Below, piece by piece: positions 17,430 through 53,145 of a DNA stretch of 64,000 bases. The stretch lies in the NCBI RefSeq assembly GCF_006345805.1, contig NC_042998.1, forward strand, positions 197,160,001-197,224,000, read 5' to 3'. A model generated the notes under the pieces. That model searched no databases. It was not told where the DNA came from and saw nothing but the letters and a program-made list of their open reading frames with translations. A program made the translations under genes and the position numbers. The stretch comes from Octopus sinensis. Its lineage: Eukaryota. Each line of letters opens with the position of its first letter. The stretch's first letter is position 1.

Positions 17430-17484
17430 GTCTTGGTTATTATTGAGGATTACCAGGAACCTGTAGTTCCAAGTGAAGCACTGG
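17430..17484 (+). CDS. Coding exon (VLVIIEDYQEPVVPSEAL), last exon before the giant satellite intron
   Basis: Acceptor ctatctttttAG ends at 17429 and donor GTAAAG starts at 17485. 55 nt, phase 0 in and phase 1 out, matching the exons on both sides. Confidence 0.72.
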
Positions 17485-17556
17485 GTAAAGTAATACTCTT
17501 AATTTTCTTAGAACTACAAATAATAGAATGAAACTATTATTACTGTTGGATTTTAG

Positions 17557-17945
17557 TGGAGGCGCAATGGCCCAGTGGTTAGGGCAGTGGACTCGCGGTC
17601 ATAGGATCGTGGTTTCGATTCCCAGACCGGGCGTTGTGAGTGTTTATTGAGCGAAAACACCTAAAAGCTTCACGAGGCTCCGGCAGGGGGATGGTGGTGA
17701 TCCCTGCTGTACTCTTTCACCACAACTTTCTCTCACTCTTACTTCCTGTTTCTGTTGTACCTGTATTTCAAAGGGCCGGCCTTGTCACTCTCTGTGTCAC
17801 GCTGAATATCCCCAAGAACTACGTTAAGGGTGCACGTGCCTGTGGAGTGCTCAGCCACTTACACGTTAATTTCATGAGCAGGCTGTTCCATCGATTCGGA
17901 TCAACCGGAACCCTCATCGTCGTAACCGACAGAGTGCTTCCATCC
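17557..17945 (+). mobile_element. SINE-B
   Basis: Full-length match. 12-bp TSD ACTGTTGGATTT at 17542-17553 and 17946-17957. Confidence 0.92.
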
Positions 17946-20900
17946 ACTGTTGGATTTAAGGACATAGGAACATATATGCATTCCTATATTTTTCTTTCTT
18001 TTTCATATTTTTTTCTCTCTGGTTCTTTTTTTTTATTATTTTTTTTGTCTGCTTTTGTAATGATCCTTATTTATTGTCTTTATAACCAAAAACTGTCAGG
18101 CTTACCTACTGACATCTTGGCAAACATCTGCTGCTTCTAGTATCAATGCAAGAGAATTTCAAGTTCAATTAGATGAGGAATGGTTATGTTGCCAAGAATA
18201 GACATGAACGATGAGATCATTATTAATAATTTCTGGGCTTTATTGTCTGAGTATTTGTACATCTGTGTTGGGTCTCATTCTCTTATCTCAGTTTCTTCAT
18301 CTAACATGATTTTAGGGTTCTTAATTTTTCCTCCTTCTCTTCAGAAGTTTCCTCAGTAAAATCTCATATAGATTTCTCTCATAAATCCATATACTTTCTG
18401 CTGTAGAGTTTTTAGTTTCTTAACATTTGCAGTGTACAAAATGTAGTCGTCTTTATACAAAAGATGGTTGATTCTCTAACCATAATATTGTCTAAATATT
18501 GTGTCAAAAATATTGTCTAAATATTGTCTAAAATATTGTCTAAAATATTGTGTCTAAATATTGTCTAAAATATTGTGTCTAAAATATTGTGTCTAAAATA
18601 TTGTGTCTAAAATATTGTGTCTAAAACATTGTGTCTAAAATATTGTGCCTAATATTGTCTAAAATATTGCGTCTAAAATATTGTATCTAAAATATTGTGT
18701 CTAAATATTGTGCCTAAAATATTGTCTAAAATATTGTCTAAAAATACTGTCTAAAATATTGTCTAAATACTGTGTCTAAATATTGTGTCTAAATATTGTG
18801 TCTAAATATTGTGTCTAAATATTGTGTCTAAAATATTGTCTAAATATTGTGTCTAAATATTGTCTAAATAATGTCTAAATATTGTGTCTAAAATATTGTC
18901 TCTAAAAATATTGTGTCTAAATATTGTCTAAAAATATTGCGTCTAAAAATATTGTTTAAATATTGTCTAAATATTGTCTAAATATTGTCTAAATATTAAG
19001 TCTAAATAATGTCTAAATATTGTCTAAATATTGTGTCTAAAAATATTGTGTCTAAAATATTGTTTAAAAATATTGCGTCTAAAAATATTGTCTAAATATT
19101 GTGTCTAAAATTATGTCTAAATATTGTGTCTAAAAATATTGTCTAAATATTGTGTCTAAAATATTGTCTAAATATTGTTTCTAAAAATATTGTCTAAAAA
19201 TATTGTCTAAATATTGTCTAAAATATTGTGTCTAAAATATTGTCTAAAAATATTATGTCTAAATATTGTGTCTAAATATTGTGTCTAAAATATTGTCTAA
19301 AATATTGTGTCTAAAAATATTGTCTAAATATTGTCTAAATATTGTCTAAAATATTGTGTCTAAATATTGTCTAAATATTGTCTAAAAATATTGTCTAAAT
19401 ATTGTGTCTAAATATTGTCAAAATATATTGTCTAAAAATATTGTCTAAAAACATTGTCTAAATATTGTGTCTAAATATTGTCTAAATATTGTGTCTAAAA
19501 TATTGTCTAAATATTGTCTAAATATTGTGTCTAAAAATATTGTCTAAATATTGTGTCTAAAAATATTGTGTCTATATATTGTGTCTATATATTGTCTAAA
19601 TATTGTGTCTAAAATATTGTCTAAATATTGTGTCTAAAAATATTGTCTAAATATTGTCTAAAAATATTGTCTAAATATTGTCTAAAATATTGTCTAAAAA
19701 TATTGTCTGAATATTGTGTCTAAAAATATTGTCTAAATTATTGTCAAAAAATAGTGTCTAAAAATATTGTCTAAAATATTGTGTCTGAAAATATTGTGTC
19801 TAAATATTGTGTCTAAATATTGTGTCTAAATATTGTGTCTAAATATTGTGTCTAAAATATTGTCTAAAAATTTTGTCTAAATATTGTCTAAATATTGTGT
19901 CTAAATATGTGTCTAAAATATTGTCTAAACTATTGTATCTAAAATATTGTGTCTAAAAATATTGTCTAAATATTGTGTCTAAAAATATTGTCTAAATATT
20001 GTGTCTAAAAATATTGTCTAAATATTGTCTAAAAATATTGTGTCTAAATATTGTCTAAAATATTGTCTAAATATTGTGTCTAAATATTGTGTCTAAATAT
20101 ATTGTTTAAAAATATTGTGTCTAAAATATTGTCTAAATATTGTCTAAAATATTGTCTAAAAATATTGTCTAAAATATTGTGTCTAATATATTGTGTGTAA
20201 AATATTGTCTAATATATTGTGTCTAAATATTGTCTAAAATATTGTGTCTAAATATTGTCTAAATATTGTTTAAATATTGTCTAAAATATTGTCTAAAATA
20301 TTGTGTCTAAAAATATTGTGTCTAAAAATATTGTCTAAATATTGTGTCTAAAAATATTGTCTAAATATTGTGTCTAAATATTGTCTAAATATTGTCTAAA
20401 TTATTGTGTCTAAAAATATTGTGTCTAAAATATTGTCTAAATATTGTGTCTAAATATTGTCTAAAATATTGTCTAAATATTGTCTAAATATTGTGTCTCA
20501 ATATTGTGTCTAAAAATATTGTCTAAATATTGTGTCCAAATATTGTCTAAAATATTGTGTCTAAATATTGTCAAAATATATTGTGTCTAAAAATATTGTC
20601 TAAATATTGTCTAAAATATTGTGTCTAAATATTGTCTAAAATATTGTGTCTAAATATTGTCTAAAAATATTGTCTAAATATTGTGTCTAAAATATTGTCT
20701 AAAATATTGTCTAAATATTGTGTCTAAATATTGTCTAAAATATTGTCTAAATATTGTGTCTAAAAATATTGTGTCTAAATATTGTGTCTAAAATATTGTG
20801 TTTAAAAATATTGTGTCTAAATATTGTGAAAATATATTGTCTAAAAATATTGTCTAAATATTGTCTAAAATATTGTGTCTAAATATTGTCTAAAATATTG

Positions 20901-21428
20901 TCTAAAAATATTGTCTAAATATTGTCTAAAAATATTGTGTCTAATATTTGTGTCTAAAATATTGTCTAAATATTGTCTAAATTGTGTCTAAATATTGTCT
21001 AAATATTGTGTCTAAATATTGTCTAAAATATTGTCTAAATATTGTAAATATTGTCTAAAAATATTGTGTCTAAAAATATTGTCTAAATATTGTGTCTAAA
21101 TATTGTCTAAAATATTATGTCTAAATATTGTCTAAATATTGTCTAAATATTGTCTAAATATTGTCTAAAAATATTGTCTAAATATTGTGTCTAAAAATAT
21201 TGTCTAAATATTGTGTCTAAATATTGTGTCTAAAATATTGTGTTTAAAAATATTGTCTAAAATATTGTCTAAATATTGTGTCTAAATATATTGTGTTTAA
21301 AAATATTGTCTAAAATATTGTGTCTAAATATTTGTCTAAAATATTGTCTAAAAATATTGTCTAAAATATTGTCTAAAATATTGTCTAAAATATTGTCTAA
21401 ATATTGTCTAAATATTGTCTAAAATATT

Positions 21429-21655
21429 ATTATTTTTTTTTTTCTTGTACTTGTTTCAGTCATTTGACTGCGGCCATGCTGGAGCACCGCCTTTAGAGTG
21501 GTGAAAGAGTACAGCAGGGATCACCACCATCCCCTGCCGGAGCCTCGTGGAGCTTTTAGGTGTTTTCGCTCAATAAACACACACAACGCCCGGTCTGGGA
21601 ATCGAAACCGCGATCCTCCGACCGCAAGTCCGCTGCCCTAACCACTGGGCCATTG
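21429..21655 (-). mobile_element. Chimeric SINE (SINE-B head + SINE-A tail + poly-A) inserted in the satellite
   Basis: Minus strand reads CAATGGCCCAGTGG...CTCTTTCACCAC/TCTAAAGGCGGTGCTCC...CAAGTACAAG(A)n. Confidence 0.9.
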
Positions 21656-24600
21656 TCTAAATATTGTCTAAATATTGTCTAAATACTGTCTAAATATTGT
21701 CTAAAAATATTGTCTAAATATTGTGTCTAAAAATATTGTCTAAATATTGTCTAAAATATTGTGTCTAAACTATTGTGTCTAAATATTGTGTCTAAAAATA
21801 TTGTCTAAAATATTGTCTAAATATGTGTGTGTCTAAAATATTGTCTAAATATTGTCTAAAATATTGTCTAAAATATTGTGTCTAAAATATTGTTCTAAAT
21901 ATTGTCTAAATATTGTGTCTAAAAATATTGTCTAAATATTGTCTAAAATATTGTCTAAAAATATTGTCTAAATATTGTCTAAATTTGTGTCTAAATATTG
22001 TGTCTAAATATTGTCTAAATTATTGTGTCTAAAATATTGTGTCTAAAAATATTGTCTAAAATATTGTCTAAAATATTGTCTAAATATTGTCTAAATATTG
22101 TCTAAAATATTGTCTAAATATTGTCTAAATATTGTGTCTAAAAATATTGTCTAAATATTGTGTCCAAATATTGTCTAAAATATTGTGTCTAAATATTGTG
22201 AAAATATATTGTCTAAAAATATTGTCTAAATATTGTGTCTAAATATTGTCTAAAATATTGTCTAAAAATATTGTCTAAATATTGTGTCTAAAATATTGTG
22301 TCTAAAATATTGTCTAAATATTGTCTAAATATTGTGTCTAAATATTGTCTAAAATATTGTGTCTAAATATTGTGTCTAAAATATTGTGTCTAAAATATTG
22401 TCTAAATATTGTGTCTAAATATTGTCTAAAATATTGTGTCTAAATATTGTCTAAATATTGTGTCTAAAAATATTGTCTAAAATTATTGTCTAAATATTGT
22501 CTAAAAATATCGTCTAAATATTGTCTAAATATTGTGTCTAAAAATATTGTGTCTATATATTGTGTCTAAATATTGTGTCTAAATATTGTCTAAAATATTA
22601 TGTCTAAATATTGTCTAAATATTGTCTAAATATTGTCTAAAAATATTGTCTAAATATTGTGTCTAAAAATATTGTCTAAATATTGTGTCCAAATATTGTC
22701 TAAAATATTGTGTCTAAATATTGTGAAATATATTGTGTAAATATTGTCTAAAATATTGTGTCTAATATTGTCTAAAAATATTGTCTAAAAATATTGTCTA
22801 AATATTGTCTAAAATATTGTGTCTAAAATATTGTCTAAATATTTATGTCTAAATATTGTCTAAAAATATTGTCTAAATATTGTCTAAATATTGTGTCTAA
22901 AAATATTGTGTCTAAATATTGTGTCTAAATATTGTGTCTAAATATTGTCTAAAATATTATGTCTAAATATTGTCTAAATATTGTCTAAATATTGTCTAAA
23001 TATTGTCTAAAAATATTGTCTAAATATTGTCTAAAAATATTGTCTAAATATTGTGTCCAAATATTGTCTAAAATATTGTCTAAATATTGTGAAAATATAT
23101 TGTCTAAATATTGTCTAAAATATTGTGTCTAAATATTGTCTAAAATATTGTCTAAAAATATTGTCTAAATATTGTGTCTAAAATATTGTCTAAAATATTG
23201 TCTAAAATATTGTGTCTAAATATTGTCTAAATATTGTCTAAAATATTATGTCTAAATATTGTCTAAATATTCTAAATATTGTCTAAAATATTGTCTAAAT
23301 ATTGTGTCTAAAAATTTGTCTAAATATTGTGTCCAATATTGTCTAAAATATTTGTCTAAATATTGTGAAATATATTGTCTAAATATTGTCTAAAATATTG
23401 TGTCTAAATATTGTGTCTAAAATATTGTGTCTAAAATATTGTCTAAAATATTGTCTAAATATTGTCTAAATATTGTCTAAAAATATTGTCTAAATATTGT
23501 GTCAAAATATTGTCTAAATATTTGTCCAAATATTGTCGAAATATTGTGTCTAAATATTGTCTAAATATTGTCTAAATATTGTGTCTAAATATTGTCTAAA
23601 ATATTGTCTAAATATTGTCTAAATGTGTCTAAAAATATTGTCTAAAATTATTGTCTAAATATTGTCTAAAAATATTGTCTAAATATTGTGTCTAAAAATA
23701 TTGTGTCTAAATATTGTGTCTAAATTGTGTCTAAATATTGTCTAAAATATTATGTCTAAATTGTCTAAATATTGTCTAAATATTGTGTCTAAAATATGTC
23801 TAAATATTGTGTCCAAATATTGTCTAAAATGTGTCTAAATATTGTGAAAATATATTGTGTAAATATTGTCTAAAATATTGTGTCTAAATATTGTCTAAAA
23901 TATTGTCTAAAAATATTGTCTAAATATTGTCTAAAATATTGTGTCTAAAATATTGTCTAAAATATTGTCTAAAATATTGTGTCTAAATATTGTCTAAATA
24001 TTGTCTAAAATATTATGTCTAAATATTGTCTAAAAATATTGTCTAAATATTGTCTAAATATTGTGTCTAAAAATATTGTGTCTAAATATTGTGTCTAAAT
24101 ATTGTCTAAAATATTATGTCTAAATATTGTCTAAATATTGTCTAAATATTGTCTAAAAATATTGTCTAAATATTGTGTCTAAAAATATTGTCTAAATATT
24201 GTGTCCAAATATTGTCTAAAATATTGTCTAAATATTGTGAAAATATATTGTCTAAATATTGTCTAAAATATTGTGTCTAAATATTGTCTAAAATATTGTC
24301 TAAAAATATTGTCTAAATATTGTCTAAAATATTGTGTCTAAAATATTGTCTAAAATATTGTCTAAATATTGTGTCTAAATATTGTCTAAATATTGTCTAA
24401 AATATTATGTCTAAAATATTGTCTAAATATTGTCTAAATATTGTCTAAATATTGTCTAAATATTGTCTAAAAATATTGTCTAAATATTGTGTCTAAAAAT
24501 ATTGTCTAAATATTGTGTCCAAATATTGTCTAAAATATTGTGTCCAAATATTGTCTAAAATATTGTGTCTAAATATTGTGAAAATATATGGTCTAAATAT

Positions 24601-27600
24601 TGTCTAAAAATTGTGTCTAAATATTGTGTCTAAAATATTGTGTCTAAAATATTGTCTAAATATTGTCTAAATATTGTCTAAATATTGTGTCTGAATATTG
24701 TCTAAAATTTGTGTCTAAATATTGTCTAAATATTGTGTCTAAAAATATTGTCTAAAATTATTGTCTAAATATTGTCTAAAATATTGTCTAAATATTGTCT
24801 AAATATGTGTCTAAAATATTGTGTCTAATATTGTGTCTAAATATTGTCTAAAATATTATGTCTAAATATTGTCTAAATATTGTCTAAATATTGTCTAAAA
24901 ATATTGTCTAAATATTGTGTCTAAAAATATTGTCTAAATATTGTGTCCAAATATTGTCTAAAATATTGTGTCTAAATATTGTGAAAATATATTGTTGTAA
25001 ATATTGTCTAAAATATTGTCTAAATATTGTCTAAAATATTGTCTAAAAATATTGTCTAAATATTGTCTAAAATATTGTGTCTAAAATATTGTCTAAAATA
25101 TTGTCTAAATATTGTGTCTAAATATTGTCTAAATATTGTCTAAAATATTATGTCTAAATATTGTCTAAAATATTGTCTAATATTGTCTAAATATTGTGTC
25201 TAAATATTGTCTAAAATATTATGTCTAAATATTGTCTAAATATTGTCTAAATATTGTCTAAATATTGTTCTAAAAATATTGTCTAAATATTGTGTCCAAA
25301 TATTGTCTAAAATATTGTCTAAAATATTGTGATGAAAAATATTGTCTAAATATTGTCTAAATATTGTGTCTAAATATTGTCTAAAATATATTGTCTAAAA
25401 ATATTGGCTAAATGTCTAAAATATTGTGTCTAAAATATTGTCTAAAACTATTGTGTCTAAATATTGTCTAAATATTGTCTAAAATATTATGTCTAAATAT
25501 TGTCTAAATATTGTCTAAATGTTGTGTCTAAAAATATTGTCTAAATATTGTGTCCAAATATTGTCTAAAATATTGTGTCTAAATTGTGAAATAATTGTCT
25601 AAATATTGTCTAAAATATTGTGTCTAAATATTGTGTCAAAATATTGTAAAATATTGTCTAAAATATTGTCTAATATTGTCTAAATATTGTCTGAATATTG
25701 TCTAAAATATTGTGTCTAAATATTGTCTAAATATTGTGTCTAAAAATATTGTCTAAAATTATTGTCTAAATATTGTCTAAAATATTGTCTAAATATTGTC
25801 TAAATATTGTGTCTAAAAATTGTGTCTAAATATTGTGTCTAAATATTGTCTAAAATATTATGTCTAAATATTGTCTAAATATTGTCTAAATATTGTCTAA
25901 AAAATATTGTCTAAATATTGTGTCCAAATATTGTCTAAAATATTGTCTAAATATTGTGAAAATATATTGTCTAAATATTGTCTAAAATATTGTGTCTAAA
26001 TATTGTCTAAAATATTGTCTAAAACTATTGTCTAAATATTGTCTAAAATATTGTCTAAATATTGTCTAAAATATTGTCTAAATATTGTCTAAATATTGTC
26101 TAAATATTATGTCTAAATATTGTCTAAATATTGTCTAAATATTGTCTAAATATTGTCTAAATTATTGTCTAAATATTGTGTCTAAAAATATTGTCTAAAT
26201 ATTCTGTCCAAATATTGTCTAAAATATTGTGTCTAAATATTGTGAAAATATATTGTCTAAATATTGTCTAAATATTGTGTCTAAATATTGTCTAAAATAT
26301 TGTCTAAAAATTGTCTAAAATATTGTCTAAATATTGTCTAAATATTGTCTAAAATATTGTGTCTAATATTGTGTATAAAATATTGTGTCTAAAATATGTC
26401 TAAATATTGTGTCTAAATATTGTGTCTAAATATTGTCTAAATATTGTCTAAATATTTGTGTCTAAAATATTGTCTAAAATTATTGTCTAAATATTGTCTA
26501 AAAATATTGTCTAAATATTGTGTCCAAATATTGTCTAAAATATTGTGTCTAAATATTGTGAAAATATATTGTCTAAAAATATTGTCTAAATATTGTCTAA
26601 AATATTGTGTCTAAATATTGTCTAAAATATTGTCTAAAAATATTGTCTAAATATTGTCTAAAATATTGTGTCTAAAATATTGTGTCTAAAATATTGTCTA
26701 AATATTGTGTCTAAATATTGTCTAAAATATTGTGTCTAAATATTGTCTAAAATATTGTCTAAAATATTGTGTCTAAATATTGTCTAAATATTGTCTAAAA
26801 TATTATGTCTAAATATTGTCTAAATATTGTCTAAATATTGTCTAAATATTGTCTAAAAATATTGTCTAAATATTGTGTCAAAAATATTGTCTAAATATTG
26901 TGTCCAAATATTGTCTAAATATTGTGTCTAAATATTGTGAAAATATATTGTCTAAATATTGTCTAAAATATTGTGTCTAAATATTGTGTCTAAAATATTG
27001 TGTCTAAATATTGTCTAAAATATTGTCTAAATATTGTCTAAATATTGTGTCTAATATTGTCTAAAATTTGTGTCTAAATATTGTCTAAATATTGTGTCTA
27101 AAATATTGTCTAAAATATTGTCTAAATATTGTCTAAAATATTTGTCTAAATATTGTCTAATATTGTGTCTAAAATATTGTGTCTAAATATTGTGTCTAAA
27201 TATTGTCTAAAATATTATGTCTAAATATTGTCTAAATATTGTCTAAATATTGTCTAAATATTGTCTAAAAATTTGTCTAAATATTGTGTCTAAAATATTG
27301 TCTAAATATTGTGTCCAATATTTTTCTAAAATATTGTGTCTAAATATTGTGAAAATATATTGTGTAAATATTGTCTAAAATATTGTGTCTAAATATTGTC
27401 TAAAATTTGTCTAAAAATATGTCTAAATATTGTCTAAAATATTGTGTCTAAAATATTGTCTAAAATATTGTCTAAAATATTTGTCTAAATATTGTCTAAA
27501 TATTGTCTAAAATATTATGTCTAAAATTTCTATGATCTATATAAATATTGTCTAAATATTGTCTAAATATTGTCTAAATATTGTCTAAAATATTGTCTAA

Positions 27601-29493
27601 AATATTGTGCTAAATATTGTCTAAAATATGGTCTAAAAATATTGTCTTAAATATTGTCTAAAATATTGTGTCTAAAATATTGTCTAAAATATTGTGTCTA
27701 AATATGTCTAAAATTGTCTAAAATATTCTAAAAATATTGTCTAAAATTTGTCTAAATGTTGTGTCTGAAAATATTGTCTAAATATTGTGTCCAAATATTG
27801 TCTAAATATTGTGTCTAAATATTGTGAAAATATATGTCTAAATATTGTCTAAAATATTGTGTCTAAATATTGTGTCTATATTGTCTAAAATAAAAAAGTG
27901 TCTAAATATTGTCTAAATATTTGGTCTGAATATTGTCTAAAATATTGTGTCTAAATATTGTCTAAATATTGTGTCTAAAAATATTGTCTAAATATTGTCT
28001 AAATATTGTCTAAAATATTGTCTAAATATTGTCTAAATATTGTGTCTAAAAATATTGTGTATAAATATTGTGTCTAAATATTGTCTAAATATTATGTCTA
28101 AATATTGTCTAAATATTGTCTAAATATTGTCTAAAAATATTGTCTAAATATTGTGTCCAAATATTGTCTAAATATTGTTCTAAATATTGTCTAAAAATAT
28201 TGTTGTGTCTAAATTTGTCTAAAATATTGTCTAAAATATTGTCTAAAATATTGTCTAAAAATGTCTAAATATTGTCTAAAATATTATGTCTAAATATTGT
28301 CTAAATATTGTCTAAAATTTGTCTAAATATTGTGTCTAAAATATTGTCTAAATGTGTGTTGTGTCTATTGTCTAAATATTGTGTCAAATATTGTCTAAAT
28401 TATTGTCTAAATATTGTCTGAAATATTGTCTAAAAAGAATATTAAAATTGTCTAAATATTGTCTAAAATATTGTCTAAAAATATTGTCTAAATATGTCTA
28501 AAAATATGTCTAAAATATTAAAAATATGTGTCTAAATATTGTCTAAATATTGTCTAAATAATATGTCTAAATATTGTGTCTAATATTTGTGTTTCTAAAT
28601 ATGTGTCTCTAATATTGTGTCTAAAATATTTCTAAATGTAAATATGGTCTAAAATATGTCTAAATATTGTCTAAATATTGTGTCTAAATATTGTCTAAAA
28701 TTGTCTAAATAATTTGTCTAAATTGTCTATATTGTCTAAAATATTGTCTGTCCAAATATTGTCTAAAAATATTGTGTAAATATTGTGAAAATATTGTCTA
28801 AAATATTGTCTAAATATTGTGTAAAATATGTGTCTAATATTGTCTAAAATCTAAATTGTGTCTAAAATATTGTCTAAATATTTTATTGTTGTCTAAATAT
28901 GTGTCTAAAATATTGTGTCTAAATATTGTGTCTAAATATTGTCTAAATATTGTCTAAATATTGTGTCAAAATATTGTGTCTAAATATTGTCTAAATATTG
29001 TTCTAAATATGTCTAAATATTGTCTAAAATATTTGTCTAAATATTGTCTAAAAATATTGTGTGTAAAATATTGTCTAAATATTGTCTAAAAATATTGTCT
29101 AAAATATATGTCTAAATATTGTCTAAATATTGTCTAAATATTGTCTAAATATTGTCTAAAATATTGTCTAAATATTGTGTCTAAAATATTGTCTAAATAT
29201 TGTGTCAAATATTGTCTAAAATATTGTGTTTAAAATATTGTCTAAAATATTGTCTAAAATATTGTTCTAAATATTTTGTCTAAATATTGTGAAATTTTAA
29301 AAATATTGTCTAAAAATATTTTCTAAATATCTAAATTAATATATTCTAAATTTGTCAAAAATAGTCTGTGTAAAAATATGTGTCAAATTGTCAAAAATAT
29401 TGTCATAAAATATTGTCTATATATATCTATAAATATTGTCTAAAATATTGTCTAAATATTTCTAAATATTGTCTAAAATATTAAATATTTAAA

Positions 29494-41700: not shown

Positions 41701-44700
41701 TTGTGTCTAAAAATATTGTCTAAATATTGTGTCCAAATATTGTCTAAAATATTGTGTCTAAATATTGTGAAAATATATTGTCTAAATATTGTCTAAATAT
41801 TGTGTCTAAATATTGTCTAAAATATTGTCTAAATATTGTGTCTAAAAATATTGTCTAAAATTATTGTCGAAATATTGTCTAAAAATATTGTCTAAATATT
41901 GTCTAAATATTGTGTCTAAAAATATTGTGTCTAAATATTGTGTCTAAATATTGTGTCTAAATATTGTCTAAAATATTATGTCTAAATATTGTCTAAATAT
42001 TGTCTAAATATTGTCTAAAAATATTGTCTAAATATTGTCTAAAAATATTGTCTAAATATTGTGTCCAAATATTGTCTAAAATATTGTGTCTAAATATTGT
42101 GAAAATATATTGTGTAAATATTGTCTAATATTGTCTAAAAATATTGTCTAAATATTGTCTAAAATATTGTGTCTAAAATATTGTCTAAAATATTGTCTAA
42201 AATATTGTGTCTAAATATTGTCTAAATATTGTCTAAAATATTATGTCTAAATATTGTTAAAAATATTGTCTAAATATTGTCTAAATATTGTGTCTAAAAA
42301 TTGTGTCTAAATATTGTGTCTAAATATTGTCTAAAATATTATGTCTAAATATTGTCTAAATAGTGTCTAAAAATAATGTCTAAATATTGTCTAAAAATAT
42401 TGTCTAAATATTGTGTCCAAATATTGTCTAAAATATTGTCTAAATATTGTGAAGATATATTGTCTAAATATTGTCTAAAAATTGTGTCTAAATATTGTCT
42501 AAAATATTGTCTAAAAATATTGTCTAAATATTGTCTAAAATATTGTGTCTAAAATATTGTCTAAAATATTGTCTAAAATATTGTGTCTAATATATTGTCT
42601 AAATATTGTCTAAAATATTATGTCTAAATATTGTCTAAATATTGTCTAAATATTGTCTAAAAATATTGTCTAAATATTGTGTCTAAAATATTGTCTAAAT
42701 ATTGTGTCCAATATTGTAAAATATTGTGTCTAAATATTGTGAAAATATATTGTCTAAATATTGTCTAAATATTGTGTCTAAATATTGTGTCTAAAATATT
42801 GTGTCTAAAATATTGTCTAAAATATTGTCTAAATATTGTCTAAATATTGTCTGAATATTGTCTAAATATTGTGTCTAAAATTGTCTAAATATTGTGTCTA
42901 AAAATATTGTCTAAATTATTGTCTAAATATTGTCTAAAAATATTGTCTAAATATTGTCTAAATATTGTGTCTAAAAATATTGTGTCTAAATATTGTGTCT
43001 AAATATTGTCTAAAATATTATGTCTAAATATTGTCTAAATATTGTCTAAATATTGTCTAAATATTGTCTAAAAATATTGTCTAAATATTGTGTATAAAAA
43101 TATTGTCTAAATATTGTGTCCAAATATTGTCTAAAATATTGTGTCTAAATATTGTGAAAATATTTGTGTAAATATTGTCTAAAATATTGTGTCTAAATAT
43201 TGTCTAAATATTGTCTAAAATATTGTCTAAAATTGTCTAAAATATTGTGTCTAAAATATTGTCTAAAATATTGTCTAAAATATTGTGTCTAAATATTGTT
43301 CTAAATATTGTCTAAATATTATGTCTAAAATTGTCTAAAAATATTGTCTAAATATTGTCTAAATATTGTGTCTAAAAATATTGTCTAAATATTGTGTCTA
43401 AATATTGTGTCTAAATATTGTCTAAAATATTATGTCTAAATATTGTCTAAATATTGTCTAAATATTGTCTAAAAATATTGTCTAAATATTGTCTAAAAAT
43501 ATTGTCTAAATATTGTGTCCAAATATTGTCTAAAATATTGTGAAAATATATTGTCTAAATATTGTCTAAAATATTGTGTCTAAATATTGTGTCTAAAATA
43601 TTGTGTCTAAAATATTGTCTAAAATATTGTCTAAATATTGTCTAAAATATTGTCTAAATATTGTCTAAATAGTGTGTCTAAAAATATTGTCTAAAATTAT
43701 TGTCTAAATATTGTCTAAAAATATTGTCTAAATATTGTCTAAATATTGTGTCTAAAAATATTGTGTCTAAATATTGTGTCTAAATATTGTGTCTAAATAT
43801 TGTCTAAAATATTATGTCTAAATATTGTCTAAATATTGTCTAAATATTGTGTCTAAAAATATTGTGTCTAAATATTGTGTCTAAATATTGTCTAAAATAT
43901 TATGTCTAAATATTGTCTAAATATTGTCTAAAAATATTGTCTAAATATTGTCTAAAAATATTGTCTAAATATTGTGTCCAAATATTGTCTAAAATATTGT
44001 CTAAATATTGTGAAAATATATTGTCTAAATATTGTCTAAAATATTGTGTCTAAATATTGTGTCTAAAATATTGTGTCTAAAATATTGTCTAAAATATTGT
44101 CTAAATATTGTCTAAAATATTGTGTCTAAATATTGTCTAAATATTGTGTCTAAAAATATTGTCTAAAATTATTGTCTAAATATTGTCTAAAAATATTGTC
44201 TAAATATTGTCTAAATATTGTGTCTAAAAATATTGTGTCTAAATATTGTGTCTAAATATTCTGTCTAAATATTGTGTCTAAATATTGTCTAAAATATTAC
44301 GTCTAAATATTGTCTAAATATTGTCTAAATATTGTCTAAATATTGTCTAAAAATATTGTCTAAATATTGTGTCCAAATATTGTCTAAAATATTGTGTCTA
44401 AATATTGTGAAAATATATTGTGTAAATATTGTCTAAAATATTGTGTCTAAATATTGTCTAAAATATTGTCTAAAAATATTGTCTAAATATTGTCTAAAAT
44501 ATTGTGTCTAAAATATTGTCTAAAATATTGTCTAAAATATTGTGTCTAAATATTGTCTAAATATTGTCTAAAATATTATGTCTAAATATTGTCTAAAAAT
44601 ATTGTCTAAATATTGTCTAAATATTGTGTCTAAAAATATTGTGTCTAAATATTGTCTAAAATATTATGTCTAAATATTGTCTAAATATTGTCTAAATATT

Positions 44701-47700
44701 GTCTAAAAATATTGTCTAAATATTGTCTAAAAATATTGTCTAAATATTGTGTCCAAATATTGTCTAAAATATTGTCTAAATATTGTGAAAATATATTGTC
44801 TAAATATTGTCTAAAATATTGTGTCTAAATATTGTCTAAAATATTGTCTGAAAATATTGTCTAAATATTGTCTAAAATATTGTGTCTAAAATATTGTCTA
44901 AAATATTGTGTCTAAATATTGTCTAAATATTGTCTAAAATATTGTGTCTAAAATATTGTCTAAAATATTGTCTAAAATATTGTGTCTAAATATTGTCTAA
45001 ATATTGTCTAAATATTGTCTAAAATATTGTGTCTAAAATATTGTCTAAAATATTGTGTCTAAATATTGTCTAAATATTGTCTAAAATATTGTGTCTAAAA
45101 TATTGTCTAAAATATTGTCTAAAATATTATGTCTAAATATTGTCTAAATATTGTCTAAATATTGTCTAAAAATATTGTCTAAATATCGTGTCTAAAAATA
45201 TTGTCTAAATATTGTGTCCAAATATTGTCTAAAATTGTGTCTAAATATTGTGAAATATATTGTCTAAAAATATTGTCTAAAATTTGTGTCTAAATATTGT
45301 CTAAAATATTGTCTAAAAATATTGTCTAAATATTGTCTAAAATATTGTGTCTAAAATATTGTCTAAAATATTGTCTAAAATATTGTCTAAAATATTGTGT
45401 CTAAATATTGTCTAAATATTGTCTAAAATATTATGTCTAAATATTGTCTAAATATTGTCTAAATATTGTCTAAAAATATTGTCTAAATATTGTGTCTAAA
45501 AATATTGTCTAAATATTGTGTCCAAATATTGTCTAAAATATTGTGTCTAAATATTGTGAAAATATATTGTCTAAATATTGTCTAAAATATTGTGTCTAAA
45601 TATTGTGTCTAAAATATTGTGTCTAAAATATTGTCTAAAATATTGTCTAAATATTGTCTAAATATTGTGTCTGAATATTGTCTAAAATATTGTGTCTAAA
45701 TATTGTCTAAATATTGTGTCTAAAAATATTGTCTAAAATTATTGTCTAAATATTGTCTAAAAATATTGTCTAAATATTGTCTAAATATTGTGTCTAAAAA
45801 TATTGTGTCTAAATATTGTGTCTAAATATTGTGTCTAAATATTGTGTCTAAATATTGTCTAAAATATTATGTCTAAATATTGTCTCAATATTGTCTAAAT
45901 ATTGTCTAAAAATATTGTCTAAATATTGTGTCTAAAAATATTGTCTAAATATTGTGTCCAAATATTGTCTAAAATATTATGTCTAAATATTGTGAAAATA
46001 TATTGTGTAAATATTGTCTAAAATATTGTCTAAAAATATTGTCTAAATATTGTCTAAAATATTGTGTCTAAAATATTGTCTAAAATATTGTGTCTAAATA
46101 TTGTCTAAATATTGTCTAAAATATTATGTCTAAATATTGTCTAAAAATATTGTCTAAATATTGTCTAAATATTGTGTCTAAATATTGTGTCTAAATATTG
46201 TCTAAAATATTATGTCTAAATATTGTCTAAATATTGTCTAAATATTGTCTAAATATTGTCTAAAAATATTGTCTAAAAATATTGTCTAAATATTGTCTAA
46301 AAATATTGTCTAAATATTGTGTCCAAATATTGTCTAAAATATTGTCTAAATATTGTGAAAATATATTGTCTAAATATTGTCTAAAATATTGTGTCTAAAT
46401 ATTGTCTAAAATATTGTCTAAAAATATTGTCTAAATATTGTCTAAAATATTGTCTAAAATATTGTCTAAAATATTGTGTCTAAATATTGTCTAAATATTG
46501 TCTAAAATATTATGTCTAAATATTGTCTAAATATTGTCTAATAAATATTGTCTAAAATATTGTCTAAATATTGTGTCTAAAATATTGTCTAAATATTGTG
46601 TCCAAATATGTCTAAAATATTGTGTCTAAATATTGTGAAAATATATTGTCTAAATATTGTCTAAAATATTGTGTCTAAATATTGTGTCTAAATATTGTGT
46701 CTAAATATTGTCTAATATTGTCTAAATATTGTCTAAATATTGTGTCTGAAATATTGTCTAAAATATTGTCTAAATATTGTCTAAATATTGTGTCTAAAAT
46801 ATTGTCTAAAATATTGTCTAAAAATATTGTCTAAATATTGTCTAAATATTGTGTCTAAAAATATTGTGTCTAAATATTGTGTCTAAATATTGTGTCTAAA
46901 TATTGTCTAAAATATTATGTCTAAATATTGTCTAAATATTGTCTAAATATTGTCTAAATATTGTCTAAAAATATTGTCTAAATATTGTGTCTAAAAATAT
47001 TGTCTAAATATTGTGTCCAAATATTGTCTAAAATATTGTGTCTAAATATTGTGAAAATATATTGTGTAAATATTGTCTAAAATATTGTGTCTAAATATTG
47101 TCTAAAATATTGTCTAAAAATATTGTCTAAATATTGTCTAAAATATTGTCTCTAAAATATTGTCTAAAATATTGTGTCTAAATATTGTCTAAATATTGTC
47201 TAAAATATTATGTCTAAATATTGTCTAAAAATATTGTCTAAATATTGTCTAAATATTCTGTCTAAAAATATTGTGTCTAAATATTGTGTCTAAATATTGT
47301 GTCTAAATATTGTCTAAAATATTATGTCTAAATATTGTCTAAATTTTGTCTAAAAATATTGTCTAAATATTGTCTAAAAATATTGTCTAAATATTGTGTC
47401 CAAATATTGTCTAAAATATTGTCTAAATATTGTGAAAATATATTGTCTAAATATTGTCTAAAATATTGTGTCTAAATATTGTCTAAAATATTGTGTCTAA
47501 AATATTGTCTAAAATATTGTCTAAATATTGTCTAAATATTGTGTCTGAATATTGTCTAAAATATTGTGTCTAAATATTGTCTAAATATTGTCTAAAAATA
47601 TTGTCTAAATATTGTGTCTAAAAATATTGTCTAAATATTGTGTCCAAATATTGTCTAAAATATTGTGTCTAAATATTGTGAAAATATATTGTCTAAATAT

Positions 47701-50700
47701 TGTCTAAAATATTGTGTCTAAATATTGTGTCTAAATATTGTGTCTAAAATATTGTCTAAAAATATTGTCTAAATATTGTCTAAATATTGTGTCTAAATAT
47801 TGTCTAAAATATTGTGTCTAAATATTGTCTAAATATTGTGTCTAAAATATTGTCTAAATTATTGTCTAAATATTGTCTAAAAATATTGTCTAAATATTGT
47901 CTAAATATGTGTCTAAAAATATTGTGTCTAAATATTGTGTCTAAATATTGTCTAAAATATTATGTCTAAATATTGTCTAAATATTGTCTAAATATTGTCT
48001 AAATATTGTCTAAAATATTGTCTAAATATTGTGTCTAAAAATATTGTCTAAATATTGTGTCCAAATATTGTCTAAATATTGTGTCTAAATATTGTGAAAT
48101 ATATTGTGTAAATATTGTCTAAAAATTGTGTCTAAATATTGTCTAAATATTGTCTAAAATATGTCTAAATATTGTCTAAAATATTGTGTCTAAATATTGT
48201 CTAAAATATTGTCTAAATATTGTGTCTAAATATTGTCTAAATATTGTCTAAAATATTGTCTAAATATTGTCTAAAAATATTGTCTACATATTGTCTAAAT
48301 ATTGTGTCTAAAAATATTGTGTCTAAATATTGTGTCTAAATATTGTCTAAAATATTATGTCTAAATATTGTCTAAATATTGTCTAAATATTGTCTAAAAA
48401 TATTGTCTAAATATTGTCTAAAAATATTGTCTAAATATTGTGTCAAAATATTGTCTAAAATATTGTCTAAATATTGTGAAAATATATTGTCTAAATATTG
48501 TCTAAAATATTGTGTCTAAATATTGTCTAAAATATTGTCTAAAAATATTGTCTAAATATTGTCTAAAATATTGTGTCTAAAATATTGTCTAAATATTGTG
48601 TCTAAATATTGTCTAAATATTGTCAAAATATTGTGTCTAAATATTGTCTAAAATATTGTCTAAAATATTGTGTCTAAATATTGTCTAAATATTGTCTAAA
48701 ATATTGTCTAAATATTGTCTAAATATTGTCTAAATATTGTCTAAATATTGTCTAAAAATATTGTCTAAATATTGTGTCTAAAACATTGTCTAAATATTGT
48801 GTCCAAATATTGTCTAAAATATGTGTCTAAATATTGTCTAAAATATTGTCTAAAAATATTGTCTAAATATTGTCTAAAATTTGTCTAAATATTGTCTAAA
48901 TATTGTCTAAATATTGTCTAAATATTGTCTAAAATATTGTGTCTAAATATTGTGTCTAAATATTGTGTCTAAAATATTGTCTAAATATTGTCTAAATATT
49001 GTGTCTAAATATTGTCTAAATATTGTCTAAATATTGTGTCTAAAATATTGTCTAAAATTATTGTCTAAATATTGTCTAAAAATATTGTGTCTAAAAATAT
49101 TGTCTAAATATTGTGTCTAAATATTGTCTGAAATATTATGTCTAAATATTGTCTAAATATTGTCTAAATATTGTCTAAATATTGTGTCTAAATATTGTGA
49201 AAATATATTGTCTAAAAATATTGTCTAAATATTGTCTAAAATATTGTGTCTAAATATTGTCTAAAATATTGTCTAAAAATATTGTCTAAATATTGTCTAA
49301 AATATTGTGTCTAAAATATTGTCTAAATATTGTCTAAATATTGTGTCTAAATATTGTCTAAAATATTGTGTCTAAATATTGTGTCTAAAATATTGTCTAA
49401 ATATTGTCTAAATATTGTCTAAAAATATTGTGTCTAAAAATATTGTCTAAATATTGTCTAAATATTGTCTAAAATTTATGTCTAAATATTGTCTAAATAT
49501 TGTCTAAATATTGTGTCTAAAATATTGTCTAAATATTGTGTCTAAAATATTGTCTAAATATTGTGTCCAAATATTGTCTAAATATTGTCTAAATATTGTG
49601 AAAATATATTGTGTCTAAATATTGTCTAAAATATTGTCTAAATATTGTCTAAAATATTGTCTTAAAATATTGTCTAAAATATTGTCTAAATATTGTCTAA
49701 AATATTGTGTCTAAAATATTGTCTAAAATATTGTCTAAAATATTGTGTCTAAATATTGTCTAAATATTGTCTAAAAATATTGTCTAAAAATATTGTCTTA
49801 ATATTGTGTCCAAATATTGTCTAAAAATATTGTCTAAATATTGTGAAAATATTTGTCTAAATATTGTCTAAATATTGTGTCTAAATTTAAATGTGTCTAA
49901 AATATTGTGTCTAAAATATGTGTCTAAATATTGTCTAAATATTGTGTCTAAATATTGTCTAAAATATTGTGTCTAAAAATATTGTCTAAAATTATTGTCT
50001 AAATATTGTCTAAAAATATTGTCTAAAATATTGTGTCTAAATATTGTCTAAATATTGTCTAAAATATTATGTCTAAATATTGTCTAAAAATATTGTCTAA
50101 ATATTGTCTAAATATTGTCTAAAAATATTGTCTAAATATTGTGTCTAAAAATATTGTCTAAATATTGTGTCCAAATATTGTCTAAAATATTGTGTCTAAA
50201 TATTGTCTAAAATATTGTCTAAAAATATTGTCTAAATATTGTCTAAAATATTGTCTAAAATATTGTCTAAATATTGTCTAAATATTGTCTAAATATTGTC
50301 TAACTAAAATATTGGTCTAAATATTGTGTCTAAAATATTGTGTCTAAAATATTGTCTAAATATTGTCTAAATATTGTGTCTAAATATTGTCTAAATATTG
50401 TGTAAATATTGTGTCTAAAATATTGTCTAAATATTGTCTAAATATTGTCTAAATATTGTCTAAATATTGTGTCCAAATATTGTCTAAAATATTGTGTCTA
50501 AATATTGTGAAAATATATTGTCTAAAAAATTGTCTAAATATTGTCTAAAATATTGTGTCTAAATATTGTCTAAAATATTGTCTAAAAATATTGTCTAAAT
50601 ATTGTCTAAATATTGTGTCTAAATATTGTGTCTAAAATATTGTGTCTAAATATTGTCTAAATATTGTCTAAATATTGTCTAAAATATTGTGTCTAAATAT

Positions 50701-53145
50701 TGTGTCTAAAATATTGTCTAAATATTGTCTAAATATTGTCTAAAAATATTGTGTCTAAAAATATTGTCTAAATATTGTGTCTAAATATTGTCTAAAATAT
50801 TATGTCTAAATATTGTCTTAATATTGTCTAAATATTGTGTCTAAAAATATTGTCTAAATATTGTGTCCAAATATTGTCTAAAATATTGTCTAAATATTGT
50901 GAAAATATATTGTCTAAATATTGTCTAAAATATTGTCTAAATATTGTCTAAAATATTGTCTTAAAATATTGTCTAAAAATATTGTCTAAATATTATCTAA
51001 AATATTGTGTCTAAAATATTGTCTAAAATATTGTCTAAAATATTGTGTCTAAGTATTGTCTAAATATTCTCTAAAATATTATGTCTAAATATTGTCTAAA
51101 TATTGTCTAAATATTGTCTAATATTGTGTCTAAAAATATTGTCTAAATATTGTGTCCAAATATTGTCTAAAATATTGTGTCTAAATATTGTGAAAATATA
51201 TTGTCTAAATATATTGTCTAAAATATTGTGTCTAAATATTGTGTCTAAAATATTGTGTCTAAAATATTGTCTAAATATTGTCTAAATATTGTGTCTAAAT
51301 ATTGTCTAAAATATTGTGTCAAAATATTGTGTCTAAAATATTGTCTAAATATTGTCTAAATATTGTGTCTAAAAATATTGTCTAAAATTATTGTCTAAAT
51401 ATTGTCTAAAAATATTGTCTAAATATTGTCTAAATATTGTGTCTAAAAATATTGTGTCTAAATATTGTGTCCAAATATTGTCTAAAATATTGTGTCTAAA
51501 TATTGTGTCTAAATATTGTGTCTAAATATATTGTGTTTAAAAATATTGTCTAAAATATTGTGTCTAAATATTTGTCTAAAATATTGTCTAAAATATTGTC
51601 TAAAATATTGTGTCTAAATATTGTCTAAAATATTATGTCTCAATATTGTCTAAATATTGTCTAAATATTGTCTATTGTCTAAATATTGTCTAAAAATATT
51701 GTCTAAATATTGTCTAAAAATATTGTCTAAATATTGTCTAAAATATTGTGTCTAAAATATTGTGTCTAAAATATTGTGTCTAAAAATATTGTCTAAAAAT
51801 ATTGTCTAAATATCGTGTCTAAAAATATTGTGTCTAAAAATATTGTGTCTAAATATTGTCTAAAAATATTGTCTAAATTATTGTGTCTTAAATGATTGTC
51901 TAAAAATATTGTCTAAATATTGTGTCTAAAATATTGTGTCTAAAAATATTGTCTAAATATCGTGTCTAAAAATATTGTGTCTAAATATTGTGTCTAAATA
52001 TTGTGTCTAAACTATTGTGTCTAAATTATTGTGTCTAAAAATATTGTCTAAAAATATTGTCTAAAATATTGTGTCTAAATATTGTCTAAAAATAGTGTCT
52101 AAATATTGTCTAAAAATATTGTCTAAATATTGTCTAAAATATTGTGTCTAAATATTGTCTAAAAATATTGTCTAAAAATATTGTGTCTAAAAATATTGTC
52201 TAAATATTGTCTAAATATTGTGTCTAAATATTGTGTCTAAAATATTATGTATATTGTGTCTAAAATATTGTGTCTATTGTGTCTAAATATTGTGTCTAAA
52301 AATATTGTCTAAATATTGTCTAAATATTTTGTCTAAAATTTTGTGTCTAAAATATTGTCTATTGTGTCTAAATATTGTCTAAATATTGTCTAAAATATTG
52401 TCTATTGTGTCTAAATATTGCGTCTAAAAATATTGTGTCTAAATATTGTGTCTAAATATTGTGTCTAAATATTGTCTAAAAATATTGTGTCAAATATTTT
52501 GTCTAAAAATATTGTCTAAAATATTGTGTCTAAATATTGTGTCTAAAATATTGTGTCTATTGTGTCTAAAATATTGTGTCTATTGTATCTAAATATTGTC
52601 TAAAAATTTTGTGTAAATATTGTCTAAATATTGTGTCTAAATATTGTCTAAATATTGTCTAAATATTGTGTCTAAAATATTGTGTCTATTGTGTGTAAAT
52701 ATTGTGTCTAAAAATATTGTGTCTAAATATTGTCTAAATATTGTCTAAAAATATTGTGTCTAAATATTGTGTCTAAAAATATTGTCTAAATATTGTCTAA
52801 AATATTGTGTCTAAATATTGTGTCTAAATATTGTGTCTGAAAACATTGTCTAAATATTGTCTAAATATTGTCTAAAATATTGTGTGTAAATATTGTGCTC
52901 AGTTAATGTGCTCTTCTTCTTACTCTTTCTGTTGTATCTCTTGAAACTGTAAAATGGAAAACCCTCTCCATACTGCAACTTCAAAATTATCAATACCTGT
53001 GTGTCTTCCATAGAAATGTTGCCCTACCTTTGCAGATGCTCGAGCCGCACATCAACTGTGTTGACTAATAGTAATGTTTAAGGTTGGCGAATGTTTATGG
53101 GTATCAACCTTACTATTAACATTATTCTATTGTCTTTATTTACAG

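What the first reader, a model, noticed from the sequence alone, without database searches (positions are those of the whole stretch)
17485..53145. A 34-kb simple satellite forming one giant intron of a protein-coding gene
Seen: exon 17430-17484 ends in phase 1 and the next in-frame exon, 53146-53187, starts in phase 1. About 96% of the 35.7 kb between them is one 11-15-bp satellite with sharp edges. Known: satellite-filled giant introns occur in Drosophila Y-linked spermatocyte genes (kl-3, kl-5), which need dedicated transcription and splicing machinery. Inference: this may be a molluscan case of intron gigantism by local satellite expansion from an AATATTGT seed.
Basis: partly seen in the sequence, partly recalled or inferred. 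Interest (0 to 1): 0.7.

Follow-up and report, generated by a model that had tools for sequence, protein, structure and literature searches.

The report
Satellite array inside a probable intron
A 34-kb run of an 11-15-base AT-rich repeat really is there and most likely sits in one intron of an uncharacterised gene, but this looks like ordinary repeat expansion in a repeat-rich genome, the gene has no outside support, and part of the array's length may be an assembly artefact.

Summary
One tandem array, ATTGT(GT)CTAAA(A)(A)T, fills 18484-52896, which is 96.5% of the interval 17485-53145, and its edges are sharp. The two small exons have good GT-AG signals and join in frame.

An unbiased exon scan of both strands picks out exactly four non-repeat candidates, all on the + strand and with compatible phases. 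E3 also has two downstream paralogues that keep their splice sites and have lengths that are multiples of three. A + strand gene with the array in an intron is therefore likely (about 0.6-0.7). No transcript or homologue supports it, and E2 needs a weak upstream donor.

The array looks like a local, passively grown satellite:
- degenerate edges around a homogenised core with a loose ~370-bp higher-order repeat;
- an antisense SINE insertion;
- an 8.05-kb internal tandem duplication.

The duplicate copies differ almost only by 1-bp indels, and a noisy patch sits at their junction, so roughly 8 kb may be artefactual.

In the sense orientation the array has almost no AG, no GTRAG and few polyA signals.

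At 35.7 kb the intron is about 14 times an octopus median intron. That is far from Drosophila megabase gigantism, and nothing indicates special machinery.

The parts
18484..52896 (+). Tandem array of ATTGT(GT)CTAAA(A)(A)T units (11-15 nt), about 2,800 copies, 19% GC
   Evidence: TRF; unit census; composition; 95.9% of bases covered by a unit match with at most 2 errors
18484..21350 (+). Left edge domain: degenerate simple units, no marker variants
   Evidence: Variant table by 1-kb bin: marker units G/H/I absent or nearly so, and many 'other' units
21350..51500 (+). Homogenised core with a loose higher-order repeat of ~370 bp (marker units ATTGTGTCCAAAT, ATTATGTCT, ATTGTGAAAATAT)
   Evidence: Recurring unit strings; marker spacing has median 370 and IQR 314-420; 40-mers occur up to 72 times
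51500..52896 (+). Right edge domain: degenerate units without markers. A ~90-bp stretch starting at 51506 repeats the stretch starting at 21266
   Evidence: offset 30240
21424..21649 (-). Antisense, 5'-truncated composite SINE insertion (tRNA-like head plus poly-A-tailed tail), copy 1
   Evidence: Gap in unit coverage; alignment with four other SINE copies in the window
29478..29709 (-). Same SINE insertion, copy 2. Same junction and private substitutions as copy 1, plus four private 1-bp deletions
21350..37450 (+). Two tandem copies of an ~8.05-kb segment (21.35-29.4 and 29.4-37.45 kb). Over 21.8-27.2 kb they show 7 mismatches but about 64 one-base indels and 30 longer indels
   Evidence: Offsets of unique 40-mer pairs; global alignment profiles
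28165..29721 (.). Noisy patch at the junction of the two 8-kb copies: many mismatches and 1-bp indels. Suspected low-quality consensus
   Evidence: excess of 'other' units in bins 27484-29483; SINE copy 2 deletions
40855..40879 (-). 25-nt inverted patch of two satellite units
   Evidence: it creates two of the 14 AG dinucleotides that lie outside the SINE inserts
17430..17484 (+). Candidate exon E2 (55 nt, phase 0 to 1), VLVIIEDYQEPVVPSEAL
   Evidence: Sequence; exon scan, GC1-GC3 = 0.39; open chain
17485..18483 (+). Unique 5' part of the putative intron. Holds a sense tRNA-derived SINE (17556-17946) and TATTGTCT motifs at 18072 and 18241
52897..53145 (+). Unique 3' part of the putative intron, with pyrimidine tract and acceptor. 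TATTGTCT at 53128
53146..53187 (+). Candidate exon E3 (42 nt, phase 1 to 1), (E)AGPETTEEDETDS
   Evidence: GC1-GC3 = 0.62
8589..8881 (+). Candidate exon E1 (95-97 codons). Strong donor GTAAGG after 8881 (phase 1), or weak donor GTTAGT after 8874 (phase 0)
   Evidence: GC1 > GC2 > GC3 (0.54/0.39/0.29), best non-repeat ORF in the window. No homologue found
56968..57030 (+). Candidate exon E4 (63 nt, phase 1 to 1), a paralogue of E3 together with its intron flanks
59115..59186 (+). Third paralogous unit, E5 (72 nt). It has stops in all three frames; only a 33-nt version (59154-59186) is open in phase 1. Probably a decayed exon copy

Best explanation
This is a locally generated AT-rich short-unit satellite, at the minisatellite-to-satellite scale. 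It expanded inside one intron of an uncharacterised + strand gene that encodes a basic, proline-rich segment followed by short acidic exons.

Shown: a single array with degenerate edges and a homogenised core that carries a loose ~370-bp higher-order repeat; one antisense SINE insertion, later copied together with ~8 kb of array; GT-AG borders and an open reading frame across the array.

Inferred history: growth by replication slippage of an 11-13-nt unit, then amplification of multi-unit blocks, then unequal exchange. The array is a passenger with no function of its own. Its transcription is tolerated because in the sense orientation the unit has no AG, no GTRAG donor and almost no AAUAAA. 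It therefore offers the spliceosome and the cleavage machinery no decoys, and the intron is removed as an ordinary, long GT-AG intron. About 8 kb of the assembled 34 kb may be an assembly duplication.
For: Array anatomy.

One insertion event, later duplicated: both SINE copies share the same junction with the satellite and the same private substitutions.

Local origin: no inverted or direct terminal repeats between the flanks; the flanks are unique within the window; TATTGTCT occurs 3 times in the 1.25 kb of unique intron sequence and nowhere else in the 29.6 kb outside the array.

Gene model: the only non-repeat AG..GT open segments with a pyrimidine tract and GC1 > GC3 on either strand are E1, E2, E3 and E4, all on the + strand. 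The phases chain either as E1a-E2-E3-E4 or as E1b-E3-E4. E3, E4 and E5 are paralogous units whose conserved flanks end exactly at AG and GT, and their variable parts are 42, 63 and 72 nt, all multiples of 3.

Sense-strand silence: 37 AG against about 1,437 expected from base composition, and 23 of the 37 lie in the SINE inserts. There are 0 GTRAG, 3 AATAAA and 3 ATTAAA. The opposite strand has 2,464 TTTAG.

Context: simple repeats make up 14.7% of an octopus genome, and introns of several kb are the norm (PMC6279123, PMC10700109).
Against: - No transcript evidence.
- E1 has no homologue among 1.84 billion representative proteins, no word-sharing hit in 5.8 billion clusters and no Pfam family, although the same database returns 261 relatives of a LINE ORF from this window.
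- E5 carries stops in all frames.
- E2 requires a weak donor on E1.
- The exon parts of E3/E4 are less conserved than their flanks, which is unusual for constrained coding sequence.
- The lack of AG is simply a property of the unit. Its sense orientation has a 50% prior, so it is not evidence of selection.
Confidence: 0.6

Rival explanations
1. The array is intergenic, or lies in a non-coding transcript or pseudogene. Under this reading the small 'exons' are chance or decayed open segments, and E3/E4/E5 are copies of a non-coding segmental duplication.
For: - No homologue or family for E1.
- E5 has stops in all frames.
- The exon cores diverge faster than the flanks.
- About 2 ORFs of 108 codons or more are expected by chance in 29.6 kb of this composition (own calculation from the composition).
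- E2 and E3 encode only 18 and 14 residues.
Against: - All four best exon candidates lie on one strand, in order, and with compatible phases.
- Their acceptor tracts hold 12-15 pyrimidines out of 17.
- They show the GC1 > GC2 > GC3 pattern.
- The paralogues differ in length by multiples of 3 and keep AG and GT.
Confidence: 0.25
2. The array is real but its assembled length is inflated, or the interval contains a mis-join. On this view the 8.05-kb tandem duplicate and the noisy junction patch come from long-read assembly of a low-complexity region.
For: - Over 5.4 kb (21.8-27.2 kb) the two copies differ by 7 substitutions but about 64 one-base indels. That ratio is typical of consensus error, not divergence.
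- SINE copy 2 has four private 1-bp deletions relative to copy 1 and to four other SINE copies.
- A contiguous degraded patch at 28.2-29.7 kb sits exactly at the copy junction.
Against: - A-run lengths recur in the same order across many higher-order copies, so most of the indel variation is heritable sequence rather than random error.
- Both array edges share the same degenerate unit type, and a ~90-bp stretch recurs at both edge/core transitions, which argues for one coherent array.
- Recent unequal exchange would also give near-identical copies.
Confidence: 0.35
3. The array is a functional giant-intron element of the Drosophila Y-loop kind. It would be transcribed in a tissue-specific programme, would need dedicated RNA-binding proteins, and would time or gate expression of the host gene.
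For: About 96.5% of the intron is one simple satellite in a single orientation. The sense strand is free of splice and polyA decoys.
Against: - The intron is 35.7 kb, against the megabases of kl-3 and kl-5 (PMC6508621).
- At ordinary polymerase speeds 35 kb adds only minutes (general knowledge).
- Introns of this size are spliced routinely in large animal genomes.
- No expression data are available.
- The edge/core structure, the SINE hit and the internal duplication are what neutral turnover produces.
Confidence: 0.05

Closest known systems
Satellite-filled gigantic introns of Drosophila Y-linked fertility genes (kl-3, kl-5, ks-1; Y-loops), PMC6508621
   Same: An intron composed almost entirely of one simple AT-rich tandem repeat, which would be transcribed in the sense of the gene.
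   Different: The Drosophila introns are 30-100 times larger or more (megabases, over 99% of the locus), sit on a heterochromatic Y, use 5-nt units, and have a demonstrated spermatocyte programme with the RNA-binding proteins Blanks and Heph. Here the intron is 35.7 kb, the units are 11-15 nt, the surroundings look euchromatic and rich in SINE/LINE copies, and there is no expression evidence.
Euchromatic satellite or satellite-like arrays in introns and near genes (Tribolium TCAST families, PMC5844308; Crassostrea gigas dispersed arrays, PMC7492417)
   Same: Tandem repeats that reside in introns of ordinary genes and very rarely overlap exons. The oyster case is a mollusc precedent.
   Different: Those are mostly single repeats or short arrays of ~100-350-bp monomers, present at many loci and often carried by Helentron or other mobile elements. 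This is one 34-kb array of a very short unit with no transposon termini.
Expanded AT-rich minisatellites of human rare fragile sites (FRA16B, FRA10B). Recalled from memory, not checked here
   Same: Short AT-rich units expanded in place to tens of kilobases by slippage and unequal exchange. Length is unstable.
   Different: Units there are ~33-42 nt, and those loci are defined by cytogenetic fragility, which is untestable here.
Higher-order-repeat satellites in general
   Same: Homogenised core with a multi-unit periodicity, degenerate edges, and transposon insertions used as markers of later duplication.
   Different: The higher-order repeat here is loose (spacing IQR 314-420 bp), and the array is small and genic rather than centromeric.

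Membership tests
Spliceosomal GT-AG intron of a protein-coding gene | GT at the 5' end; pyrimidine tract and YAG at the 3' end | tested here: met
   CTGG|gtaaag at 17484/17485 and tctttatttacag|AGG at 53145/53146; 14 pyrimidines out of 17 upstream of both acceptors
Spliceosomal GT-AG intron of a protein-coding gene | Flanking exons join in one open reading frame | tested here: met
   The E2-E3-E4 translation is open over 53 codons. E1b (phase 1) also joins E3 in frame
Spliceosomal GT-AG intron of a protein-coding gene | Flanking exons belong to a protein with recognisable relatives or domains | tested here: not met
   No hit for E1+E2+E3 in 5.8 billion clusters. Only a spurious repeat protein (E = 6e-4) among 1.84 billion representatives. 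No Pfam family
Spliceosomal GT-AG intron of a protein-coding gene | Spliced transcript across the junction | not testable with these tools
   No RNA data for this genome are reachable. An exact-protein look-up of the E1 ORF found nothing
Drosophila-type intron gigantism (Y-loop genes) | Introns of hundreds of kb to Mb that make up over 99% of the locus | tested here: not met
   The intron is 35,661 bp, against megabases for kl-3 (PMC6508621). That is about 14 times the O. vulgaris median intron (PMC10700109)
Drosophila-type intron gigantism (Y-loop genes) | Intron filled by simple satellite DNA | tested here: met
   96.5% of the intron is one array
Drosophila-type intron gigantism (Y-loop genes) | Cell-type-specific transcription programme with dedicated RNA-binding proteins | not testable with these tools
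   No expression or protein-binding data
Satellite DNA | Long head-to-tail array of a defined monomer | tested here: met
   About 2,800 copies over 34.4 kb
Satellite DNA | Homogenisation or higher-order structure | tested here: met
   Marker units recur with a median spacing of 370 bp; unit strings recur
Satellite DNA | High genomic abundance, or presence at several loci | not testable with these tools
   Only this window is available. A metagenome scan for a 24-mer gave 8 unrelated 2-5-unit matches and no arrays
Transposon-borne tandem repeats (Helentron/MITE central arrays) | The array is bounded by transposon termini or inverted repeats, and the flanks are themselves repeated | tested here: not met
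   No inverted or direct flank similarity above shuffled controls. The flanks 17947-18483 and 52897-53045 have no other copy in the window

The most novel reading that the evidence does not exclude
The array is maintained in this orientation by selection. On that reading only the AG-free, polyA-free strand can be transcribed through, and the 34 kb of U/A-rich repeat RNA acts as a timing or dosage element for the host gene. It might also serve as a sponge for UGU/AU-binding proteins. That would make it a molluscan, autosomal counterpart of satellite-intron gene regulation.
Probability: 0.05. Interest if true: 0.6.

Novelty: new member of a known kind. Interest (0 to 1): 0.2.

Why it matters
If the gene model is confirmed, this is a clean, fully sequenced example of an intron enlarged roughly 30-fold by a single in-place satellite expansion. 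Its internal markers (degenerate edges, a SINE hit, a higher-order repeat, an 8-kb duplication) let the order of events be read off. It also shows how repeat orientation decides whether a long array is harmless to splicing: 37 AG on one strand against 2,597 on the other. It does not open a new kind of biology. Tandem repeats are a major component of cephalopod-type genomes, and a 36-kb intron is within ordinary spliceosome capacity. The practical value is as a caution for annotation, since RNA-seq aligners capped at 20-kb introns (as in PMC9795677) would miss such a junction, and for assembly quality control in low-complexity regions.

Tried and rejected
- Homology for the host gene. A word-indexed search of E1a+E2+E3 gave no hits. 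An exhaustive phmmer search of E1 gave one spurious repeat protein. Pfam on E1 and eight other ORFs gave nothing. An exact look-up of the E1 ORF gave nothing.
- Taxon identification. A LINE ORF from the window found 261 relatives in ENA, JGI and NCBI contigs, but none carried a name or organism. A literature search for the assembly accession GCA_024449705 found nothing. 'Mollusc/cephalopod' therefore rests on my recollection of these SINEs and is unverified.
- Satellite elsewhere. The metagenome scan returned only 2-5-unit chance matches.
- Rfam and tRNA scans of the window were empty.
- Transposon-borne array. No terminal repeats were found, so this was rejected.
- Human-trained splice-site weight matrices proved uninformative for these AT-rich GTAAAG/GTATAT donors. 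I replaced them with a simpler filter.
I did not pursue it, since short exons would not reach domain thresholds.
- An all-against-all BLAST within the array timed out. I replaced it with offsets of unique 40-mers.
- A conserved hairpin at the E3/E4/E5 donors is weak (-5.9 kcal/mol, three sequences) and was not taken further.
Full report
**1. Observation**

Tandem Repeats Finder reports a single array at 18484-52896. It is 34,413 bp long, has periods 11/13/24 and about 2,800 copies, with 81% matches and 15% indels. That is 96.5% of the interval 17485-53145.

- Splitting the array at ATTGT gives 2,548 units. Six variants of ATTGT(GT)CTAAA(A)(A)T, 11-15 nt long, account for 71% of the array.
- GC drops from about 0.39 in the flanks to 0.19 inside.
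- The borders are abrupt.
- The array is not pure. Unit-match coverage is 95.9%. The gaps are two ~230-bp SINE fragments at 21424-21649 and 29478-29709, and a 25-nt inverted patch at 40855-40879.

- 17430-17484 follows ...tctatctttttag and is followed by gtaaag.
- 53146-53187 follows ...tctttatttacag and is followed by gtatat.
- The first ends in phase 1, and the join is open.

**2. Is there a gene?**

I looked for further exons.

E1 is a 108-codon open frame at 8584-8907. It holds a well-formed exon starting at 8589, after a tract of 15 pyrimidines out of 17. It has two possible donors:
- a strong donor, GTAAGG, after 8881, giving phase 1;
- a weak donor, GTTAGT, after 8874, giving phase 0.

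E4 is a further exon at 56968-57030 (63 nt, phase 1 to 1) that continues the frame after E3.

I then applied a deliberately simple filter to both strands: at least 12 of 17 pyrimidines, YAG, a GT donor, an open frame, and GC1-GC3 of at least 0.12. Outside SINEs and microsatellites it returns exactly E1, E2, E3 and E4. All are on the + strand, and their GC1-GC3 values are 0.25, 0.39, 0.62 and 0.55. Nothing comparable appears on the - strand. E1 has the coding-type gradient GC1 0.54 > GC2 0.39 > GC3 0.29, and it is the top non-repeat ORF among the 144 ORFs of 60 codons or more.

The phases chain in two ways: E1a-E2-E3-E4, or E1b-E3-E4 with E2 skipped. In either case the array lies in the intron that ends at 53145.

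E3 is one of three tandem paralogous units, at 53046-53255, 56866-57100 and 59037-59247.
- In the alignment, the conserved flanking blocks stop exactly at the AG and start again exactly at the GT.
- The variable middles are 42, 63 and 72 nt, all multiples of three.
- E3 and E4 are open in the same phase.
- E5 has stops in all frames. Only a 33-nt version using a downstream acceptor is open, so it looks like a decayed copy.

This pattern is what tandem exon duplication in a low-complexity acidic region produces, and it is moderately good evidence for real exons.

Against the gene:
- E1+E2+E3 found nothing in the 5.8-billion-cluster search.
- E1 found only one spurious repetitive protein among 1.84 billion representatives.
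- There is no Pfam match, and the exact ORF is not on record.
- The database is not blind to this kind of genome. A LINE ORF from 62672-63301 found 261 relatives at up to 87% identity. Those are scattered short contigs, however, so the negative result is only weak evidence.

I put the probability that the array is intronic in a + strand protein-coding gene at about 0.6-0.7. Whether E2 itself is used is less certain.

**3. Anatomy and history of the array**

The variant table by 1-kb bin shows three domains.
- The edges, 18.5-21.3 kb and 51.5-52.9 kb, consist of degenerate simple units and lack the marker variants.
- The core, 21.3-51.5 kb, carries marker units (ATTGTGTCCAAAT, an ATTATGTCT double unit, and ATTGTGAAAATAT). 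These recur in the same unit order, for example ...AGBCIDABCBDABEE..., with a median spacing of 370 bp and an IQR of 314-420. This is a loose higher-order repeat.
- A ~90-bp stretch at 21266 recurs at 51506, at the two edge/core transitions.

The two SINE fragments are the same insertion. Both are antisense and 5'-truncated at the same base against the same satellite junction (TTAGACAATGGCCC). They share private substitutions relative to four other copies of the SINE in the window. They lie 8,054 bp apart.

Offsets of unique 40-mer pairs and a global alignment show a tandem duplication of about 8.05 kb, spanning 21.35-29.4 kb and 29.4-37.45 kb.

The inferred order of events is:
1. a short-unit array forms;
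2. the SINE inserts;
3. multi-unit blocks are amplified;
4. the 8-kb segment is duplicated.

No terminal inverted or direct repeats bound the array, and its flanks are single-copy in the window. It is therefore not a transposon-borne array.

TATTGTCT occurs three times outside the array (18072, 18241, 53128). All three are on the + strand and inside the 1.25 kb of unique intron sequence. About one is expected in the whole 29.6 kb, or about 0.04 in the flanks. Even after allowing for about a dozen possible 8-mers of the unit, this suggests a local proto-repeat or decayed outlying units.

**4. Assembly caveat**

Between 21.8 and 27.2 kb the two 8-kb copies differ by only 7 substitutions, but by about 64 single-base indels and 30 longer ones. 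SINE copy 2 has four private 1-bp deletions that copy 1 and all other SINE copies lack. A contiguous degraded patch at 28.2-29.7 kb coincides with the junction of the copies.

Differences that are almost all indels are typical of long-read consensus error in AT-rich low-complexity DNA. There are two possible readings:
- the duplication is very recent and poorly polished;
- it is an assembly artefact, and the true array is about 26 kb.

The recurrence of A-run lengths in a fixed order across higher-order copies shows that most of the unit-length variation elsewhere is real.

**5. How it most likely works**

On the + strand the 34.4 kb contains only 37 AG dinucleotides, against about 1,437 expected from base composition, and 23 of them lie in the SINE inserts. 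It also has no GTRAG, three AATAAA and three ATTAAA.

On the - strand there are 2,597 AG, of which 2,464 are TTTAG behind T-rich runs.

Read in the sense of the putative gene, the repeat therefore offers no decoy 3' splice sites, no consensus donors and almost no cleavage signals. The intron can be defined by its true ends like any long intron. This is a property of the unit, and its orientation had a 50% prior, so it explains tolerance and does not demonstrate selection.

The only strong decoys are in the antisense SINE inserts. A T-run followed by TTGTTTCAG ends at 21459 and at 29519, and an AG|GTGTTT site follows 100-104 nt later. The segments between have stops in all frames. These would be poison exons if used.

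I see no evidence for a function of the array itself.

**6. Comparison with known cases**

The Drosophila Y-loop genes have introns of megabases that make up over 99% of the locus, and they use a dedicated spermatocyte programme (PMC6508621). This intron shares the satellite filling but fails the size criterion by about two orders of magnitude.

For scale:
- the median intron in Octopus vulgaris is 2,467 bp, and 66% of that genome is repeats (PMC10700109, PMC13282606);
- the mean intron in O. minor is 5.4 kb, and simple repeats make up 14.7% of that genome (PMC6279123).

Intronic satellite copies are documented in Tribolium (PMC5844308) and in oyster genes (PMC7492417), though as short arrays of longer monomers. 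The present case is best filed as a new, unusually long and clean member of the class of in-place tandem-repeat expansions inside introns.

I could not verify the taxon. The SINE and LINE content fits a cephalopod-like genome, but that rests on memory only.

**7. Verdict**

Novelty is low, and interest is 0.2.

Noticed in passing
window 53046-53255, 56866-57100, 59037-59247: Three tandem paralogous exon-plus-flank units (E3, E4, E5). The intron flanks are better conserved than the exon cores, and the conserved blocks stop and start exactly at AG and GT. The conserved donor GTAWATTT can pair with AATGTATA about 25 nt downstream, but the hairpin is weak (-5.9 kcal/mol) and rests on only three sequences.
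   Followed up: partly
window 21460-21559 and 29520-29623 (+ strand): The antisense SINE inserts supply the only strong 3' splice-site-like signal in the array: a T-run followed by TTGTTTCAG. A donor-like AG|GTGTTT follows 100-104 nt later, and the segment between has stops in all frames. These are potential poison exons, analogous to antisense-Alu exonisation.
   Followed up: partly
window 28165-29721: A contiguous patch with many private mismatches and 1-bp indels, exactly at the junction of the two 8.05-kb copies. It looks like a poorly polished or single-read-supported stretch of the assembly.
   Followed up: partly
window 40855-40879: A 25-nt patch of two satellite units in inverted orientation inside an otherwise uniformly oriented array. 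It creates TTTAG and ATAG on the + strand.
   Followed up: no
window 9756-10190: A near-perfect tandem repeat of a 29-bp unit, AGACTCCTGTCCTATTCGGTGGGAATTTT, with 15 copies and 99% matches, in the E1-E2 interval. It is very young, or under homogenisation.
   Followed up: no
window 16012-17108: A tandem duplication of a ~548-bp segment (two copies, 95% identical over 300 nt) that includes part of a SINE-like element and a microsatellite. It lies just upstream of E2.
   Followed up: partly
window 6114-6347: A 230-bp (GAT/ATC)-type trinucleotide array gives long poly-Asp, poly-Ser or poly-His open frames on both strands. It ranks at the top on crude coding measures and is a trap for exon finders.
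   Followed up: no
window 77-485, 10446-10658, 58427-58601, 63684-63899 and others: A SINE-like family with an internal 62-68-bp tandem repeat (consensus around GTGGCACGTAAAAAGCACC...) occurs at least eight times in the window. Together with tRNA-headed SINE copies (5354, 8955, 17556, 60288) and LINE tails (2223-3142, 57087-57515, 62672-63301), it makes the flanks mostly interspersed repeats.
   Followed up: partly
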